Below, in pieces: positions 7,105 to 53,527 of a stretch of 64,000 nucleotides of DNA. A model generated the notes under the pieces. The model made no database searches. It worked only from the letters and a program-made list of their open reading frames with translations, and was not told the origin of the DNA. Both the position numbers and the translations under genes were made by a program. The stretch's first letter is position 1. Each line of letters begins with the position of its first letter. The DNA lies in the IMG/VR virus record IMGVR_UViG_3300034072_000926, positions 372,001 to 436,000 of that record, one strand, 5' to 3'.

Positions 7105-7307
7105 CGAAATGCAGCCCGTCCCAGCTTATAGAGAATGAACAGACCGACCAGCGTAGGAAGGATGATCATGCCCGCCGATGTCAGGACATAGAGGGTTGCG
7201 CCGACCACCCAGAGGATGAACAGAAGGATTTTCACAGCCATTGCACCCACTGCTAGGATGCAGCAAATGATGATCAGGAACAGTAGACAACCCAACATTT
7301 CATTCAT
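7101..7307 (-). CDS. small membrane protein
   Basis: highly hydrophobic 68 aa; GGAGG SD. Confidence 0.7.
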   Translation of the reverse strand: MNEMLGCLLFLIIICCILAVGAMAVKILLFILWVVGATLYVLTSAGMIILPTLVGLFILYKLGRAAFR

Positions 7308-7465
7308 TCTTCGATCCTCCAGATCACGACCTTGTCGAACATTGCCGACTTTGCGGAGATCACACTGGCCCGCTTGATGGGGTCAGTGGCCTCTTCCGTA
7401 GTTATCTCGAACGGGTGTTCCTTACGGTGACGCCCGTTCTTGGTCGTGATGATCAGCTTTGCCAT
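7304..7465 (-). CDS. small hypothetical protein (53 aa)
   Basis: MAKLIITTKNGRH...IEE*, coupled to neighbours at both ends. Confidence 0.65.
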   Translation of the reverse strand: MAKLIITTKNGRHRKEHPFEITTEEATDPIKRASVISAKSAMFDKVVIWRIEE

Positions 7466-39684: not shown

Positions 39685-40053
39685 TTATTGCTTCAAATCA
39701 ACAGGAGTTATTTCCTTTGGAGCATCCGGACGAGTCTCGCCGATGCTCTTCAGCTTTTCGTCCTGTTCTTTCTGTAGTTCTGCCTCTCGTTGCGCAGCAT
39801 TCATGTCCATCAGGTCATTGCATTCGCCCCTCGTGAACACGCCATCGGCTTTAGATTTCAGAATGAAGATCCTGAAATTGGGATGGGTTTCATAGAAGGA
39901 CTCGAACAGACTGTAGCAGGAATCTGAGGCACGTTCGTTGTCACGATGGTGGTTCATGTAATAGGGAAAGCCTACCCCAAAACCCACTATCACTGCACAA
40001 CATGAAGCGAACAGTAAAGCTGATGATCGATTAGACAATCTCTTCCTCCTCAA
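39685..40053 (-). CDS. membrane-anchored hypothetical protein
   Basis: N-terminal TM. Confidence 0.65.
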   Translation of the reverse strand: MRRKRLSNRSSALLFASCCAVIVGFGVGFPYYMNHHRDNERASDSCYSLFESFYETHPNFRIFILKSKADGVFTRGECNDLMDMNAAQREAELQKEQDEKLKSIGETRPDAPKEITPVDLKQ

Positions 40054-41668
40054 TCAACACGCCTGCTCGAATCCTCAAAATGTTGATGCAGTTCTCAAGA
40101 CCATACGCCTCAATGAATGCACCGAACCGAGGACCATCACTGGATCCCAACAGGCACTCGTATAGCGCCTGGAACCAAGAACGCAAAGGTTCAAATCCAT
40201 GTGCCTTGCCAACCTCATATACCTGATACTGGTAATGATCAGCCGTCATGTTGGGCAGCATTGCCTCAAGGCGAGTAGCAAGGTCGATGAACGCATCAGC
40301 TTCCTGAACCGTTGGTTCCCGACATTCACGATCATACAGACCACGCTCAGTCGCGTAGCGGATGACCTTGTTGGCCTTGATGAGAACCTGCAACCGCTGC
40401 TGGAAGTCAAGTGGTCGAGACTGTTCGAGGTAGCTGACCAGCGTTTCAGCGTCCGAAGCCTGGCTGACCACGCTCAAGTTGAGCAATAGGCTATACGCCA
40501 CATCGACGATCGGTTCGGCGATCCCATTCTCAGTGAAGAACCACGCAGCATCGTTCGGAGTGAGCGGTCGCCCAAGCATCTTCAGATAGTCGTCTTCCAT
40601 CTTGGGAACAAGATCGATATGAATCGGCTTAGATGCAGTCGGCTTCTGGAACAGGAAGAGCATGAGCGATTCCTTAGAGCCATAGGACAACCAGTCCTCA
40701 ATCGAAAAGCCATTGCCCTTCGACTTGCTGATCTTCTTGCCCTCTGCGTCGAGGAAGAGTTCATAGGTCATGCCAACTGGAGGTGTCCCGCCGATTGCAC
40801 GACAGATCTTCCGAGAAGCCGTAACCGAATCAATGAGATCCTTGCCGGACATTTCGTAGTCCACATCAAAGTGAGCCCAGCGCATTGCCCAGTCCACCTT
40901 CCACTGAAGCTTGGAGCGACCATTACCCGTTGGGCTCGTCACCGCCGTGACATCATCCCTTCCGGTTTCCCACGTGAGCTGGCGCCCGGGGATCACCATT
41001 TCGCGCGAGACACCCTCATTGAGGAGTCGTCCCTCAAAAAGCGGCATGAATGGACTGTAGGTTGCGCGGCGCTCCTCACCCAGTGTGGGCAGCATCACGC
41101 CCTGAATGGCATCGTAATTGTCCCAGATGCGATCCAGCATTTCGTTGAACTTGCCCGACCGGTAATAGTCAGAGGAGCTCACGAAGGATACGCGACTCCG
41201 ATCCGGCGAGCTGCCGACCACCGAGCCATCGTAGGTCTTGAGAATGTCGTCAACAAACCGCACCAGACGATCGTTGTTAGCGCCCGCAAAGCTGCCTGCA
41301 TACTGGTCGGCATCGTTGGCCACGCACTCGTCCATTTCCGGATAAGGATTTGGAACCGTGCTCAGCGGCTTGCCCAGATAATCCTGCATCCACGCGGGCA
41401 TCCCATCAGGAACCTTCCGCATCGCGTCGTAGTCGTCGCTGAACATGATAAGTCGAGTCTGATACGCCTTGTCAGTCAGCGTATCAAATGCCTTCATAAC
41501 CCAAAGGGTGCGAACAACTTCTGCGAACGTGCCGATATGCGGCGCACCCGAGGGACCATAGCCGGTCTCGAACGTCACGACATCACCAGGCTTCTTCCCC
41601 TTCTTCTCAATATGCTTGAGAAGTGAACGGGCCTCTTGGAAGGGCCAGCTCTTTGCCTGAGTAGTCAC
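40031..41668 (-). CDS. lysS: lysine--tRNA ligase, class I
   Basis: SWPFQEA, FETGYGPSGAPHIGTFAEV, KLQWKVDW, EMSGKDL, KISKSKGNG, GPRFG; AAGGAGG SD before GTG. Confidence 0.92.
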   Translation of the reverse strand: MTTQAKSWPFQEARSLLKHIEKKGKKPGDVVTFETGYGPSGAPHIGTFAEVVRTLWVMKAFDTLTDKAYQTRLIMFSDDYDAMRKVPDGMPAWMQDYLGKPLSTVPNPYPEMDECVANDADQYAGSFAGANNDRLVRFVDDILKTYDGSVVGSSPDRSRVSFVSSSDYYRSGKFNEMLDRIWDNYDAIQGVMLPTLGEERRATYSPFMPLFEGRLLNEGVSREMVIPGRQLTWETGRDDVTAVTSPTGNGRSKLQWKVDWAMRWAHFDVDYEMSGKDLIDSVTASRKICRAIGGTPPVGMTYELFLDAEGKKISKSKGNGFSIEDWLSYGSKESLMLFLFQKPTASKPIHIDLVPKMEDDYLKMLGRPLTPNDAAWFFTENGIAEPIVDVAYSLLLNLSVVSQASDAETLVSYLEQSRPLDFQQRLQVLIKANKVIRYATERGLYDRECREPTVQEADAFIDLATRLEAMLPNMTADHYQYQVYEVGKAHGFEPLRSWFQALYECLLGSSDGPRFGAFIEAYGLENCINILRIRAGVLIEEEEIV

Positions 41669-41740
41669 GTATGCCTCCTTGAATACTATCAAGCTGCAAC
41701 GTATAGACAATCACACAGGTGTCAACCTATTTAGGAGGAC

Positions 41741-48792: not shown

Positions 48793-49140
48793 TTAACGGC
48801 AGCGACGGTCGATTGCGCGTCCTGCCAGAGCACCAGCACCGGCGCCTACGATAGTGCCAGTTGCACGATCGCCTTCGGTATCGATGGAGCGACCCAGCAG
48901 TCCGCCTGCTACTGCGCCGAGAATTGTGCCGGTGGTTCCACCACGGCAACGCTCGCCACGATAGCCATTGCGGTATGGACCACGGCGATCATAACGGTCA
49001 TAACCACGATAAGGACGATAGTCCCTGTAGTGACGGTCATAGCGATAGCCACGATCATGACGACCATGATCCCTTGCCTCAGCGGCAACAGGAGCCAGAA
49101 CCATCAGAGAGGCCATAAGACCAAGAATGAGCTTTTTCAT
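48793..49140 (-). CDS. secreted glycine-zipper 2TM protein
   Basis: signal peptide, R/Y/D-rich linker, GTILGAVAGGLLG...GTIVGAGAGALAGRAIDR. Confidence 0.85.
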   Translation of the reverse strand: MKKLILGLMASLMVLAPVAAEARDHGRHDRGYRYDRHYRDYRPYRGYDRYDRRGPYRNGYRGERCRGGTTGTILGAVAGGLLGRSIDTEGDRATGTIVGAGAGALAGRAIDRRCR

Positions 49141-49644: not shown

Positions 49645-49695
49645 ATATCACCTTTTAATATTGATTAGCTGTCCTGCTCTATGTATAACAAGGAC

Positions 49696-50012
49696 AGTAG
49701 GAAAGCAAATTGTGAGGACGAAATACCGCACAAAGAATTTTCCCACTAGACTAGCATCCCTGCTCAGTGGGCCCTAAATCGGTATGGGGATACAGACCGA
49801 CGTTGACCTGCCACCGTAAACGCACAGGGGCCTTTCGGGATTGAGCTATATCAATTCTCGGGTGTTGGATATCACCGCCCTATCCAGGTACGCCTACTAT
49901 CCAAGGGGCGAAGTTGGGGAAGAACTTCTAAATAAGTCCTGCGGGGCAATCCGCCGAGGTCAACGTAGCCTCAAGAGCCAGGAAACTTTCTAGTCAACTG
50001 TTTCCTGGCTCG
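49696..50012 (+). ncRNA. candidate large structured ncRNA (~300 nt)
   Basis: TTGATT-N17-TATAAC promoter at 49661-49689; no ORF; 10-bp ACGTTGACCT/AGGTCAACGT closing stem; many hairpins; 12-bp terminal hairpin. Confidence 0.6.
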
Positions 50013-50030
50013 CTTTGCCATAAATACACA

Positions 50031-50124
50031 TGACAGAGACGCCTAATTGGTATGGGCGCTTCCGCACTTCGGGCAGGCGTATCCAGTGGAAGAGTGTAGC
50101 GGGGTTCAAATCCCCGCCCTGTCA
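50031..50124 (+). tRNA. tRNA-like RNA with extended anticodon arm (isotype not assignable)
   Basis: acceptor TGACAGAG/CCCTGTCA, D-arm CGCCT-AATTGGTAT-GGGCG, T-arm CGGGG-TTCAAAT-CCCCG; no encoded CCA. Confidence 0.65.
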
Positions 50125-50125
50125 C

Positions 50126-50317
50126 TTACGAAGCGAAATCAGGATCGATCACGCGAGGATGATCCTTGGCAGACTCGAACCCCATCTGATAGGCCGGCGT
50201 CCCGCTTTTGTAGCGTTCCATCAGCTCAGTGTGACCTTCGCCATAGTAGCGAACTCCATCCTGCTGGCCGGTCTGATACTGGGCCTGATTGGTGTCGAAA
50301 GTCAAGCTCTTATACAT
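50126..50317 (-). CDS. hypothetical protein
   Basis: YQTGQQDG...AYQMGF; AAGGA SD. Confidence 0.65.
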   Translation of the reverse strand: MYKSLTFDTNQAQYQTGQQDGVRYYGEGHTELMERYKSGTPAYQMGFESAKDHPRVIDPDFAS

Positions 50318-50332
50318 GAGACGTCCTTCCCG

Positions 50333-50587
50333 TTATACTAGGCGGCGCACTGGATTACCGTCGCGATCAATACGCTCAATAATGCCATAGCAGAATAATT
50401 GCAACTGATCCCATTCCTCGCTTAGTGCGAGGGCACGGCTATATGCCATTTCAATGAGATCCGGGATCTTAACGAACCGAGGATCCGTCGACGGAAGGCT
50501 GAATTCCTTAACGATCTTGTCCTCGAGAAGAACCGTCACATTATGATCGCGATTGGAATGGCGCGGTACATTCATTCTCTGAAACAT
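50333..50587 (-). CDS. hypothetical protein
   Basis: AAAGGAG SD. Confidence 0.7.
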   Translation of the reverse strand: MFQRMNVPRHSNRDHNVTVLLEDKIVKEFSLPSTDPRFVKIPDLIEMAYSRALALSEEWDQLQLFCYGIIERIDRDGNPVRRLV

Positions 50588-52845: not shown

Positions 52846-53078
52846 CTAACTACGAACCAAATCCCTAGAGAAACTATCCCAATCCTCACAGTATCGTAGA
52901 TGAAATCCACAATACGATATGGGATTTTGAAGTCGAAGGGTTCATAGCCGTTCTCTGAACGGTATTTTCGTAGCCGTCTATCTGCGATAATGCTTCCAGT
53001 CATCGCAAAAATGACAGCACCAATATAGAGTGTGATGGCAAAAGCCACTAGGACCTTTGCCATCACAATCCAAGTCAT
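52842..53078 (-). CDS. small membrane protein
   Basis: two hydrophobic segments. Confidence 0.65.
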   Translation of the reverse strand: MTWIVMAKVLVAFAITLYIGAVIFAMTGSIIADRRLRKYRSENGYEPFDFKIPYRIVDFIYDTVRIGIVSLGIWFVVS

Positions 53079-53527
53079 GCAGCGAGAACCTGGCGGACGA
53101 CCGCGCTGGCCTTGGCCTTGTCGAGCGAGGTGCCGAAAGTTGTGGACAGATGTGCCATGATGGCGCCCATCTGCTTCATGGTCTTCTCGGGCAGCGTCGC
53201 AGCAAAGGTCTCAGCTTCGCCACGGATGTCGTCCTCGCTTGCCATCTGCGGCAGCAGCGATTCCAGCATGGCCAGTTCGCGGATGCTCTGCTCATGATCG
53301 GGCTTCAGCGCCAGCGTGTCGTTGACCTGTTTGATCGACTTCTGGATTGCACGGAGCGCGTCCTCATCAGTGACCACAGCCGACGCAGGATCCTGCTTCA
53401 GCTTGACCACAGTTTCCTTCGCGTTCGCAGTGGCCAGTGCCTGAACCGCCTGGAACGAGCCGGCCAGCGGGTCGCGAGTCTTCCGCAGCTCGAGGGTTTT
53501 TGCGTTCAACGCGGCGAGAATACTCAC
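53075..53527 (-). CDS. GatB/YqeY domain protein
   Basis: ELAMLESLLPQMASEDDI, MKQMGAIM, ASAVVRQVL. Confidence 0.85.
   Translation of the reverse strand: MSILAALNAKTLELRKTRDPLAGSFQAVQALATANAKETVVKLKQDPASAVVTDEDALRAIQKSIKQVNDTLALKPDHEQSIRELAMLESLLPQMASEDDIRGEAETFAATLPEKTMKQMGAIMAHLSTTFGTSLDKAKASAVVRQVLAA

What the first reader, a model, noticed from the sequence alone, without database searches (positions are those of the whole stretch)
50021..50124. tRNA mimic with normal D/T arms but a ~34-nt extended anticodon arm
Seen: canonical D-loop (AATTGGTA) and T-loop (TTCAAAT), and an acceptor helix with one A-C mismatch and no CCA. The anticodon region is CTTCCGCACTTCGGGCAGGCGTATCCAGTGGAAG, a long imperfect stem with no 7-nt loop. 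TAAATA lies 10 nt upstream. Inference: a non-decoding tRNA-like RNA (decoy for anticodon nucleases or tRNA-sensing defences, or a Y-RNA-like scaffold), an intron-containing tRNA, or a decaying tRNA.
Basis: partly seen in the sequence, partly recalled or inferred. Interest (0 to 1): 0.7.

Follow-up and report, generated by a model that had tools for sequence, protein, structure and literature searches.

The report
Megaphage tRNA-shaped RNA with oversized anticodon loop
A family of very large phages carries a conserved RNA that folds like a tRNA but has a 21-22-base loop with an invariant 16-base sequence where the anticodon should be, so it is most likely a working tRNA mimic and not a decoder, an intron-bearing tRNA or a dead gene.

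Summary
Window 50032-50124 (+) folds as a cloverleaf with normal D and T loops, a 7-bp acceptor stem with one A.C mismatch, no encoded CCA, and a 6-7-bp "anticodon" stem closing a 22-nt loop. The window lies in a 465-kb phage record that also has 58 ordinary tRNAs.

Six homologues turned up in related huge-phage contigs. Nine of the 22 stem pairs show compensatory changes. The A.C mismatch and the loop sequence GGGCAGGCGTA(T/A)CCAG never vary, although neighbouring proteins are only 27-88% identical. That excludes a decaying tRNA.

An intron-containing tRNA-Trp is unlikely. The would-be U33 is A in 4 of 7 members. After in-silico removal of the insert, ARAGORN accepts only 1 of 7. No splicing endonuclease or RtcB gene was found, and the T stem tolerates 1-nt indels.

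In all seven members the element sits directly behind a previously undescribed, covariation-supported structured RNA of about 320 nt with its own promoter-like motif. In two members the gap is only 8 nt, which implies one transcript.

Best reading: a non-decoding tRNA-scaffolded RNA, matured by tRNA-processing enzymes, whose invariant loop binds an unknown partner. Expression and partner are unproven. The phages also encode Ro60, which leaves a Y-RNA-like role possible.

The parts
50032..50124 (+). tRNA-shaped RNA of 93 nt: acceptor, D arm, extended anticodon-position arm, 7-nt variable loop, T arm and discriminator A. C50125 is also invariant in the family.
   Evidence: Sequence. Six of the seven family members fold into the cloverleaf as their minimum-energy structure. 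Seven-member alignment A9 has 9 covarying pairs. Model hits at E = 1e-20 to 1e-35.
50059..50092 (+). Anticodon-position arm: a 6-bp stem (50059-50064 with 50087-50092; C50065-G50086 can add a seventh pair) closing a 22-nt loop.
   Evidence: Four of the six stem pairs show compensatory changes across the family, and 100% of cells are paired. Loop length is 21-22 nt in all seven members.
50071..50086 (+). Invariant 16-nt loop core, GGGCAGGCGTA(T/A)CCAG. It is the most conserved part of the element and is proposed as the recognition module.
   Evidence: It is identical in all seven members apart from one T/A position, while the D loop, the T loop and every stem except the invariant D stem vary. 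It occurs only once in the phage genome, and no complement with fewer than 4 mismatches exists there.
50037..50037 (+). A6 of the invariant A.C mismatch with C50118 (position 6:67) in the acceptor stem.
   Evidence: Unpaired in 7 of 7 members, although pairs 2, 3 and 4 of the same helix covary freely.
50021..50026 (+). TAAATA box ending 5 nt before the element. It could be a weak promoter -10 element or an AU-rich processing site.
   Evidence: Present in 5 of 7 members and absent in L031 and L156. No conserved -35 element; that position falls in a covarying hairpin arm.
49696..50015 (+). Upstream structured non-coding RNA of about 320 nt. Its 3' domain has a GNRA-capped hairpin (49941-49954), a second hairpin (49956-49972) and a long hairpin (49975-50011) whose loop contains TAGTCAAC. 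That loop motif can pair with the invariant GACTAG at 49749. The 5' end given here is inferred from the promoter-like motif.
   Evidence: Indels between relatives are not multiples of three, so it is non-coding. 27 of 51 predicted pairs covary in five sequences, and 14 of 24 in seven sequences for the 3' domain. Many G.U pairs fix the strand as +. No Rfam family matches. It lies next to the tRNA-like element in all seven members.
49661..49689 (+). Promoter-like motif TTGATT, 17-nt spacer, TATAAC, in front of the upstream RNA.
   Evidence: The pattern TTG(A/C)nn-17-TATAA(C/G/A) is found at the same place in 6 of 6 members whose sequence was held. The consensus scan did not list it because the last base of the second hexamer is not T.

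Best explanation
The element is a functional, non-decoding tRNA mimic that belongs to a two-part RNA locus of a clade of huge phages (records of 277-465 kb).

Shown:
- The cloverleaf is kept by selection.
- The elbow-forming D and T loops are intact.
- In place of an anticodon loop there is a 21-22-nt loop carrying an invariant 16-nt sequence.
- An A.C mismatch at position 6:67, discriminator A and the following C never change.
- A second, larger structured RNA with its own promoter-like motif always lies immediately upstream on the same strand.

Inferred:
- Both RNAs are made as one transcript from the upstream promoter.
- RNase P cuts at the 5' end of the tRNA-shaped part. This frees the upstream RNA, which ends in its long hairpin, and releases the tRNA-shaped RNA.
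- The 3' end is trimmed and receives CCA from the phage's own CCA-adding enzyme.
- The tRNA fold gives stability and access to tRNA-handling proteins, while the invariant loop is the part that recognises a specific protein or RNA partner.
- It does not read codons.
- The partner is unknown.
For: Selection on the structure:
- Seven homologues, 94% of pair cells standard, 9 of 22 pairs with double changes, and no shuffle or slid register comes close.
- In the closest relative, nucleotide identity of the aligned stretch that includes short flanks is 93%, while neighbouring proteins are 27-88% identical.
- Strain contigs show no change in 49665-50146 but 8 changes in the next 140 nt of coding DNA.
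- A T-stem variant seen in another sample changes both strands together.

Not a decoder:
- ARAGORN default and intron modes fail.
- The would-be U33 is A in 4 of 7 members.
- After deleting the insert in silico, ARAGORN accepts only 1 of 7.
- The T stem has 1-nt indels in three members, and the variable loop is 6-8 nt.

tRNA-type processing is plausible:
- U at -1 in 6 of 7 members.
- The 3' flank after the discriminator A (C followed by a non-CA trailer) matches about half of the phage's 58 ordinary tRNAs.
- All four phage genomes that were searched, three of them carriers of the element, encode a PolyA_pol-family CCA-adding enzyme.

Co-transcription:
- The upstream RNA is adjacent in 7 of 7 members.
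- In L031 and L156 its last hairpin ends 8 nt before the tRNA-shaped part, with no room for a promoter.
- The U tracts after the hairpin are weak, and the terminator scan finds none.

The loop as effector:
- The 16-mer is more conserved than the D and T loops, which do change in L156 and L153.
Against: - No direct evidence of transcription, strand, ends, CCA addition or stability. RNA-library data were available only as unstranded contigs at low, even depth.
- Two RNA-labelled runs hold almost only this 426-nt stretch of the 4-kb region. That enrichment could equally mean that a relative shares only the conserved part.
- No partner was found. The loop has no conserved complement in the upstream RNA or in the phage genome, and none emerged among 80 bacterial loci.
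- TAAATA in 5 of 7 members could be a separate promoter.
- G001 has about 180 extra nt between the two RNAs.
- The invariance of the loop means its own fold cannot be tested by covariation.
Confidence: 0.55

Rival explanations
1. Y-RNA-like partner of the phage Ro60 protein. The tRNA-shaped RNA would bind, or be handed to, the phage-encoded Ro60/TROVE ring, as bacterial YrlA RNAs with tRNA-like domains do, and tether it to an effector such as a 3'-5' exonuclease.
For: TROVE genes are present in all four near-complete genomes that carry the element (G000, G001, G003, G004) and absent from the related G002, which lacks it. Bacterial and phage Y RNAs mimic tRNA D and T arms (PMC4201824). The conserved RNA next to the phage rsr gene has no obvious tRNA-like domain, so a tRNA-like partner could be encoded elsewhere.
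Against: The element lies 292 kb from rsr, whereas nearly all YrlA genes lie within 4 kb on the same strand (PMC4201824). It has no 5'/3' stem with the GNCGAA motif, and its ends sit in the acceptor stem, the opposite topology to YrlA. A better Y-RNA candidate with a CGAAG motif and a long 5'/3' stem sits about 1.3 kb upstream of rsr. The co-occurrence rests on five related genomes and is confounded by ancestry.
Confidence: 0.12
2. Decoy or false signal aimed at host systems that cut, sense or count tRNAs. Targets could be anticodon nucleases, toxins that act on tRNA ends, or sensors of uncharged tRNA such as T-box leaders, by analogy with the Bacillus cereus pseudo-tRNA tRNA-Other.
For: The element has an intact elbow and acceptor end, and an invariant CCA triplet at the 3' edge of the loop. 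Like tRNA-Other, it appears to be non-decoding and part of a larger RNA, in a genome that has a class I LysRS (PMC3399842).
Against: The loop resembles no anticodon loop: it lacks a 7-nt geometry and a conserved U33. Known phage countermeasures to anticodon nucleases, as I recall them, use near-normal tRNAs with loop substitutions. No host or defence system is known for these uncultured phages. Nothing here tests binding.
Confidence: 0.12
3. Pure processing and stability signal. The tRNA shape exists only to recruit RNase P, and so to define the 3' end of the upstream RNA as mascRNA does for MALAT1. The released tRNA-shaped piece would have no function of its own.
For: It is adjacent to the upstream RNA in 7 of 7 members, with 8-nt spacing in two of them. 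The best Rfam hit, though weak, is the mascRNA model (E = 0.07).
Against: RNase P needs only the acceptor-T stack. This does not explain a covarying anticodon-position stem, an invariant 16-nt loop or an invariant D arm.
Confidence: 0.1
4. Intron-containing tRNA-Trp(CCA). A 15-17-nt insert between positions 31 and 32 would be removed to give a decoding tRNA.
For: At a lowered threshold ARAGORN reads it this way. The G000 sequence with the insert deleted passes ARAGORN as tRNA-Trp. The CCA triplet is invariant.
Against: Position 33 is A in 4 of 7 members, and 6 of 7 deleted forms fail ARAGORN. No bulge-helix-bulge fold could be drawn by hand. No tRNA-intron endonuclease or RtcB is encoded in three genomes. 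The bacterial-type promoter-like motif and CCA enzyme point to a bacterial host, where, to my knowledge, only group I introns are known in tRNAs. The phage already has a normal tRNA-Trp(CCA), and no TrpRS is encoded. The insert is the most conserved part, which is unlike an intron.
Confidence: 0.04
5. Decaying tRNA pseudogene, or a leftover attachment-site copy of a host tRNA.
For: It has a mismatch in the acceptor stem, no CCA and no usable anticodon loop, and tRNA finders do not call it.
Against: There are seven homologues with compensatory changes in three helices, an invariant loop, and higher conservation than the flanking genes. Both halves of the cloverleaf are kept, and none of the ten neighbouring ORFs scanned matches an integrase family.
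Confidence: 0.02

Closest known systems
YrlA-type bacterial and phage Y RNAs (Ro60-associated tRNA mimics; PMC4201824)
   Same: A non-decoding RNA with tRNA-like D and T arms. It is found in phages that encode Ro60. It may be a substrate for RNase P and CCA addition, as Mycobacterium smegmatis YrlA is.
   Different: YrlA has its ends in a Ro60-binding stem at the anticodon position and a closed acceptor-like hairpin. It carries a GNCGAA motif and lies within a few kb of rsr. This element has normal tRNA topology, a closed large loop at the anticodon position and no such motif, and it lies 292 kb from rsr.
mascRNA / MALAT1 and MEN-beta tRNA-like 3' modules (Rfam RF01684)
   Same: A tRNA-like structure directly behind a longer non-coding RNA. 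RNase P cleavage would define the upstream RNA's 3' end and release a small tRNA-like RNA. It is the best, though sub-threshold, Rfam hit.
   Different: That family is eukaryotic and nuclear. mascRNA has a reduced D arm and a short anticodon-position stem. There is no sequence relationship (22 bits against a cut-off of 42.5). Here the loop sequence is the most conserved feature.
Bacillus cereus pseudo-tRNA tRNA-Other (PMC3399842)
   Same: A tRNA-shaped RNA that does not act in translation and is transcribed as part of a larger RNA. It carries a CCA triplet at the anticodon position, in a genome that has a class I LysRS.
   Different: tRNA-Other is a cellular gene beside a genomic island and is annotated with a Trp anticodon. 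The present element has a 21-22-nt loop and is phage-borne. No homology was tested or seen.
tmRNA tRNA-like domain
   Same: A tRNA mimic in which the anticodon arm is replaced by other RNA.
   Different: tmRNA lacks a full D arm, carries a tag reading frame and pseudoknots, and encodes or acquires CCA for alanylation. ARAGORN finds no tmRNA here. An apparent short frame running from the loop is not conserved in L031.
Engineered tRNA scaffolds for RNA expression (anticodon arm replaced by a cargo RNA)
   Same: The same architecture: an intact acceptor, D and T framework with a foreign sequence displayed on the anticodon stem. In the laboratory this gives stability and correct processing.
   Different: That is a laboratory design recalled from general knowledge. 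This would be a natural counterpart, with a 16-nt conserved cargo.

Membership tests
Canonical decoding tRNA | Cloverleaf with 7-bp acceptor, D, anticodon and T stems | tested here: met
   22 pairs, 94% of cells paired, 9 pairs with double changes. One invariant A.C mismatch at 6:67.
Canonical decoding tRNA | Seven-nucleotide anticodon loop with U33 and a purine at 37 | tested here: not met
   The loop is 21-22 nt in 7 of 7 members. The only 7-nt reading has A at position 33 in 4 of 7.
Canonical decoding tRNA | Elbow nucleotides (G18 G19 in the D loop, TTCRA in the T loop) | tested here: met
   GG and TTC(A/G)AAT are invariant in the seven-member alignment.
Canonical decoding tRNA | Recognised by tRNA finders or the Rfam tRNA clan at curated thresholds | tested here: not met
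   ARAGORN default and -i60 find nothing. The best clan hit is tRNA-Sec at 18.5 bits against a cut-off of 47.
Intron-containing tRNA (archaeal type) | Removing the insert restores a canonical anticodon loop in all members | tested here: not met
   ARAGORN accepts only 1 of 7 deleted forms. Position 33 is not conserved.
Intron-containing tRNA (archaeal type) | Splicing endonuclease and ligase available | tested here: not met
   PF01974 and RtcB are absent from G000, G001 and G003 while the control genomes give hits. The host's enzymes could not be examined.
Intron-containing tRNA (bacterial group I type) | Self-splicing intron of a few hundred nt in the anticodon loop | tested here: not met
   The insert is 15-17 nt and there is no Intron_gpI hit in the window. 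The same search method did find a group I intron elsewhere in G003.
YrlA / Y RNA | Genome encodes Ro60 (TROVE) | tested here: met
   TROVE is over the cut-off in G000, G001, G003 and G004.
YrlA / Y RNA | Encoded within about 4 kb of rsr on the same strand | tested here: not met
   rsr is at G000:129912-130856 and the element is at G000:422032-422124.
YrlA / Y RNA | A stem formed by the 5' and 3' ends that carries GNCGAAN0-1G, with the tRNA-like domain closed at the acceptor position | tested here: not met
   The ends are in the acceptor stem and the anticodon-position arm is closed. The motif is absent from the element. The GGCGAAG in the upstream RNA lies in a covarying hairpin and is not conserved.
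YrlA / Y RNA | Bound by Ro60 | not testable with these tools
   Needs immunoprecipitation or a gel-shift assay.
mascRNA-like 3' processing module | tRNA-like fold directly 3' of a longer non-coding RNA on one transcript | tested here: inconclusive
   Adjacent in 7 of 7 members and 8 nt apart in two. No stranded read data could be obtained to show one transcript.
mascRNA-like 3' processing module | Matches Rfam RF01684 at the gathering score | tested here: not met
   22 bits against 42.5, E = 0.07.
mascRNA-like 3' processing module | Cleaved by RNase P and RNase Z, with CCA added | not testable with these tools
   There is only indirect support: flanks resemble those of the phage's real tRNAs, and the phage encodes a CCA-adding enzyme.
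tmRNA | tRNA-like domain plus a tag reading frame, as detected by ARAGORN | tested here: not met
   No tmRNA in the window or the genome.

The most novel reading that the evidence does not exclude
A clade of huge phages may encode a previously undescribed two-RNA system. One part is a compact ribozyme-sized RNA of about 320 nt with a GNRA tetraloop and a likely loop-to-5'-end pairing. The other is a tRNA-scaffolded effector that displays an invariant 16-nt sequence. Both would come from one early transcript and be separated by host tRNA-processing enzymes. The tRNA-shaped RNA would then act as a sequence-specific adaptor or trap for a host or phage factor. That would make it a new class of viral tRNA mimic, unrelated to Y RNAs, tmRNA or the 3' tRNA-like structures of RNA viruses.
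Probability: 0.4. Interest if true: 0.78.

Novelty: new variant of a known kind. Interest (0 to 1): 0.64.

Why it matters
Huge phages carry large sets of tRNAs and translation genes, and why they do so is still debated. A tRNA-shaped RNA that is clearly kept by selection yet cannot decode shows that part of this "tRNA" repertoire has other uses.

It also offers a natural example of a tRNA scaffold displaying a conserved sequence. It exposes a neighbouring large structured RNA that is absent from Rfam, and it links both to phages that encode Ro60. Finding the partner of the 16-nt loop could reveal a new route by which phages manipulate host RNA metabolism or defences. The fold may also be useful as a naturally optimised RNA display scaffold.

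Tried and rejected
- GenBank phages: blastn of the 800-nt region found no match.
- First scans of viral contigs: the exact T-arm/acceptor pattern and the neighbouring 148-aa protein found nothing.
- G002, a relative found through the nearby AAA protein at 49% identity: no synteny beyond that gene and no model hit.
- Recent duplicate of one of the phage's own tRNAs: rejected. The best match is 52 of 76 identities.
- Loop pairing with the phage genome: every complement has at least 4 of 16 mismatches.
- Loop pairing with the upstream RNA: the best duplexes fall at different places in each of the seven members.
- Loop mimicking or targeting a conserved cellular RNA:
None of the 80 loci fetched placed the 16-mer in a tRNA-like context.
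  - One small cluster lies antisense in a conserved gene for a protein I take to be TrpB-like. By a rough hand estimate this is what codon usage would produce by chance.
- GNCGAA Ro60 motif: too frequent to be informative, and not conserved in the upstream RNA.
- A tmRNA-like short reading frame running from the loop to a stop in the variable loop: not conserved in L031.
- Bulge-helix-bulge intron fold: none could be drawn by hand.
- Protein coding by the + strand ORF 50030-50341: rejected, because of 1-nt indels among homologues.
- Expression: contigs from RNA libraries cover the locus at low, even depth and cannot show strand or ends.
- Neighbouring small proteins: most have no family match.

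Full report
**Setting.** The window is bases 372001-436000 of a 465,259-base virus record rated complete. ARAGORN finds 58 ordinary tRNA genes in that genome, mostly in arrays at the two ends of the record. They include a normal tRNA-Trp(CCA) and two tRNAs with a CUA anticodon. The window itself encodes a class I lysyl-tRNA synthetase, an FtsK-like ATPase, a radical SAM protein and other genes. The finding lies in a 481-base gap (49645-50125) between genes that all run on the minus strand.

**The observation.** On the plus strand, 50032-50124 reads as follows:
- a 7-bp acceptor stem with one A.C mismatch (A50037 with C50118);
- two spacer bases;
- a 4-bp D stem with loop AATTGGTAT;
- one spacer base;
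- a stem CTTCCG / TGGAAG enclosing 22 nt;
- a 7-nt variable loop;
- a 5-bp T stem with loop TTCAAAT;
- discriminator A, followed by CTT, so there is no encoded CCA.

TAAATA is at 50021-50026. It is a short perfect stem with a large loop.

Standard tools do not call the element:
- ARAGORN finds nothing by default or with introns allowed. Only at a lowered threshold does it report a tRNA-Trp(CCA) with a 17-nt insert between positions 31 and 32. That setting also produces 11-13 calls per 22 kb of ordinary phage DNA.
- Rfam gives nothing at curated thresholds. Its best weak hits are mascRNA (22 bits, E = 0.07) and tRNA-Sec (18.5 bits).

**Homologues.** Six were found.
- A nearby AAA-ATPase gene led to a 462-kb relative, G001. 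G001 has the element at 89% identity over the matched stretch and 93% in the direct two-sequence alignment.
- DNA patterns taken from the invariant parts found five more:
  - G003, 436 kb;
  - two metagenome contigs, L031 and L026;
  - two further viral contigs, L156 in a 417-kb record and L153 in a 277-kb record.
- A covariance model built from the first two sequences scores the others at E = 1e-20 to 1e-29.
- In the phage's own genome the next best hit is an ordinary tRNA-Glu at E = 5e-5.
- Gene order around the element is kept, although the neighbouring proteins are only 27-88% identical.

**Selection on the structure.** In the seven-sequence alignment:
- 94% of pair cells are standard pairs;
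- 9 of 22 pairs change on both sides (3 in the acceptor stem, 4 in the anticodon-position stem, 2 in the T stem);
- no shuffle out of 500 reaches the observed covariation score;
- sliding the partners by one to three columns destroys the signal.

The only non-pair is the A.C mismatch at 6:67, which is the same in all seven members.

Strain-level data agree. Two DNA runs have contigs with no change from 49665 to 50146 but eight changes in the next 140 bases of the neighbouring gene. A contig from another sample carries the G001-type T stem, with both strands changed together. This is not a decaying gene.

**What is conserved in the loop.** The loop reads CA, three or four variable bases, then GGGCAGGCGTA(T/A)CCAG. 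That 16-mer differs at one position across all seven members. By contrast, the D loop and T loop themselves change in L156 and L153. The most constrained part of the molecule is therefore the part that makes it unlike a tRNA.

**Is it a tRNA with an intron?** The reading that gives a Trp anticodon needs the 7-nt loop A-T-CCA-G-T.
- The T at position 33 is A in four members.
- With the insert deleted in silico, ARAGORN accepts only the window's own copy.
- The T stem has single-base deletions in three members, and the variable loop is 6-8 nt. Both would be unusual for a tRNA that must fit the ribosome.
- No tRNA-intron endonuclease or RtcB ligase is encoded in three genomes, while control genomes gave hits.
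- The promoter-like motif and the bacterial/eukaryotic-type CCA enzyme point to a bacterial host. To my knowledge, short protein-spliced tRNA introns are not known in bacteria.
- An intron would not be expected to be the most conserved segment.

I put this reading at about 4%.

**Context: a second RNA.** The roughly 370 bases upstream are also conserved, and their indels are not multiples of three. They fold into a structure with many compensatory changes: 27 of 51 predicted pairs in five sequences, and 14 of 24 pairs in seven sequences for the 3' domain.
- The 3' domain has a hairpin capped by a GNRA tetraloop (GCAA, GAAA, GTGA or GTAA), a second hairpin, and a long hairpin of about 13-16 bp whose loop contains the near-invariant TAGTCAAC.
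- The TAGTC of that loop is complementary to the invariant GACTAG near the 5' end, so a long-range pairing is possible. It cannot be tested because neither side varies.
- Frequent G.U pairs fix the strand as plus.
- A motif TTG(A/C)nn-17-TATAA(C/G/A) stands at the same distance upstream in all six members for which sequence was held.
- No Rfam family matches.
- This RNA precedes the tRNA-shaped element in 7 of 7 members. The gap is 18-21 nt in four, about 200 nt in G001, and only 8 nt in L031 and L156, which lack TAAATA.
- The U tracts behind the long hairpin are short, and the terminator scan reports nothing.

The simplest reading is one transcript carrying both RNAs.

**Processing.**
- U precedes the first base in 6 of 7 members.
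- The discriminator A and the following C are invariant.
- About half of the phage's real tRNAs lack an encoded CCA and have the same kind of 3' flank. One example is CAC followed by TTAC at a tRNA-Arg.
- All four phage genomes that were searched (G000, G001 and G003, which carry the element, and G002, which does not) encode a CCA-adding enzyme.
- G003 happens to encode CCA after the discriminator.

RNase P cleavage, 3' trimming and CCA addition are therefore plausible, but they are inferred and not shown.

**Ro60.**
- All four near-complete genomes that carry the element encode a TROVE (Ro60) protein. The related G002, which lacks the element, does not.
- Bacterial and phage Ro60 proteins bind Y RNAs, some of which mimic tRNA (PMC4201824, PMC12135203).
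- The element fails the defining features of YrlA. It is 292 kb from rsr. Its ends are in the acceptor stem and not in a Ro60-binding stem. It has no GNCGAA motif.
- A better candidate Y RNA lies about 1.3 kb upstream of rsr on the same strand. It is conserved in three phages and has a CGAAG motif and a long stem formed by its two ends.
- The GGCGAAG in the upstream RNA of the window sits in a hairpin arm that covaries away in other members. The motif is in any case common by chance.

I keep a Ro60 link as a 12% rival.

**Search for a partner of the loop.** All of these searches came back empty:
- no complement in the phage genome with fewer than four mismatches;
- no conserved pairing site in the upstream RNA;
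- scattered, taxonomically unrelated hits in bacterial genomes, none placing the 16-mer in a tRNA-like context among the 80 loci fetched;
- a small cluster of hits antisense in a conserved gene for a protein I take to be TrpB-like, which by a rough hand estimate is what codon usage alone would give.

**Expression.** Four wastewater metatranscriptome runs contain contigs over the locus at low depth, similar to the flanks. These contigs cannot show strand or ends, and the libraries may contain DNA.

Two runs labelled RNA hold about 0.06-0.07 of the sampled words of the 4-kb region but 0.57-0.64 of the words of the 426-base RNA locus. So nearly everything they share with the region is this locus. 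That fits a highly expressed RNA. It equally fits a relative that shares only the conserved part.

**Verdict.** The element is a real, conserved, tRNA-shaped RNA family restricted, so far, to a clade of huge phages. It is not in Rfam and was not found in GenBank phages. The most likely mechanism is a non-decoding tRNA scaffold that is co-transcribed with, and cut away from, a larger structured RNA, and that presents an invariant 16-nt loop to an unknown partner.

It works like known tRNA mimics (YrlA, mascRNA, the B. cereus pseudo-tRNA) but meets the membership criteria of none of them. I rate it a new variant of a known kind. Interest is moderate to high because the function is open, the selection is clear, and a second unknown RNA and a phage Ro60 come with it.

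Noticed in passing
window 49661-50015 (+): A structured non-coding RNA of about 320 nt that is absent from Rfam. It has a conserved promoter-like motif, a GNRA-capped hairpin, and a long terminal hairpin whose loop can pair with an invariant GACTAG near the 5' end. It is present upstream of the tRNA-shaped element in all seven family members.
   Followed up: partly
G000:C1:129912-130856 (-), outside the window; locus L019 4220-5992: The phage encodes a Ro60/TROVE protein with an open frame of about 590 aa. Its relatives G001, G003 and G004 do too. G002, which lacks the tRNA-shaped RNA, does not.
   Followed up: partly
L019 about 7200-7420 (-), with matching stretches in L020 and L021: A conserved non-coding stretch about 1.3 kb upstream of the Ro60 gene on the same strand. 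It has a CGAAG motif and complementary 5' and 3' segments, which makes it a plausible phage Y RNA. Rfam gives no hit.
   Followed up: partly
window 40031-41710 (-): A class I (archaeal-type) lysyl-tRNA synthetase gene, Pfam tRNA-synt_1f at E = 6e-88. No TrpRS or TyrRS was found in this phage.
   Followed up: no
window 53075-53527 (-): A YqeY-like protein (GatB-tail domain; PHROG 'tRNA amidotransferase'), 74-78% identical in relatives. It lies 3 kb from the RNA locus. As I recall, this domain binds tRNA, so it is a candidate tRNA-binding protein.
   Followed up: no
G000:C1 c222209-222282 and c441571-441647 (outside the window): Two tRNAs with a CUA anticodon (amber suppressors) among the 58 tRNA genes. 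They raise the question of TAG reassignment in part of the genome. No alternative code was applied here.
   Followed up: no
G000:C1 c5839-5911 and c4830-4938: Other odd entries in the tRNA array. One tRNA is called with a two-base anticodon. ARAGORN's intron mode also gives a poor 'tRNA-Ser(ACT)' with a 17-nt insert and a mismatched acceptor stem, which shares no sequence with the element studied.
   Followed up: no
L009 about 337-515 (G001:136236-136414): G001 has an insertion of about 180 nt between the upstream RNA's terminal hairpin and the tRNA-shaped element. The other six members do not have it.
   Followed up: no
L021 500-716 (-) in G003: A group I intron (Rfam Intron_gpI, 85 bits, E = 1e-20) lies a few kb from the Ro60 gene of G003.
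   Followed up: no
G000:C1:63778-64143 (-), outside the window: A phage-encoded CCA-adding enzyme (PolyA_pol family). It is conserved in all four searched genomes, which fits the finding that about half of the phage tRNA genes lack an encoded CCA.
   Followed up: no
window 48793-49140 (-): A small secreted or membrane protein with a signal-like N terminus, an Arg/Tyr/Asp-rich repeat region and a glycine-zipper domain. It lies two genes from the RNA locus.
   Followed up: no
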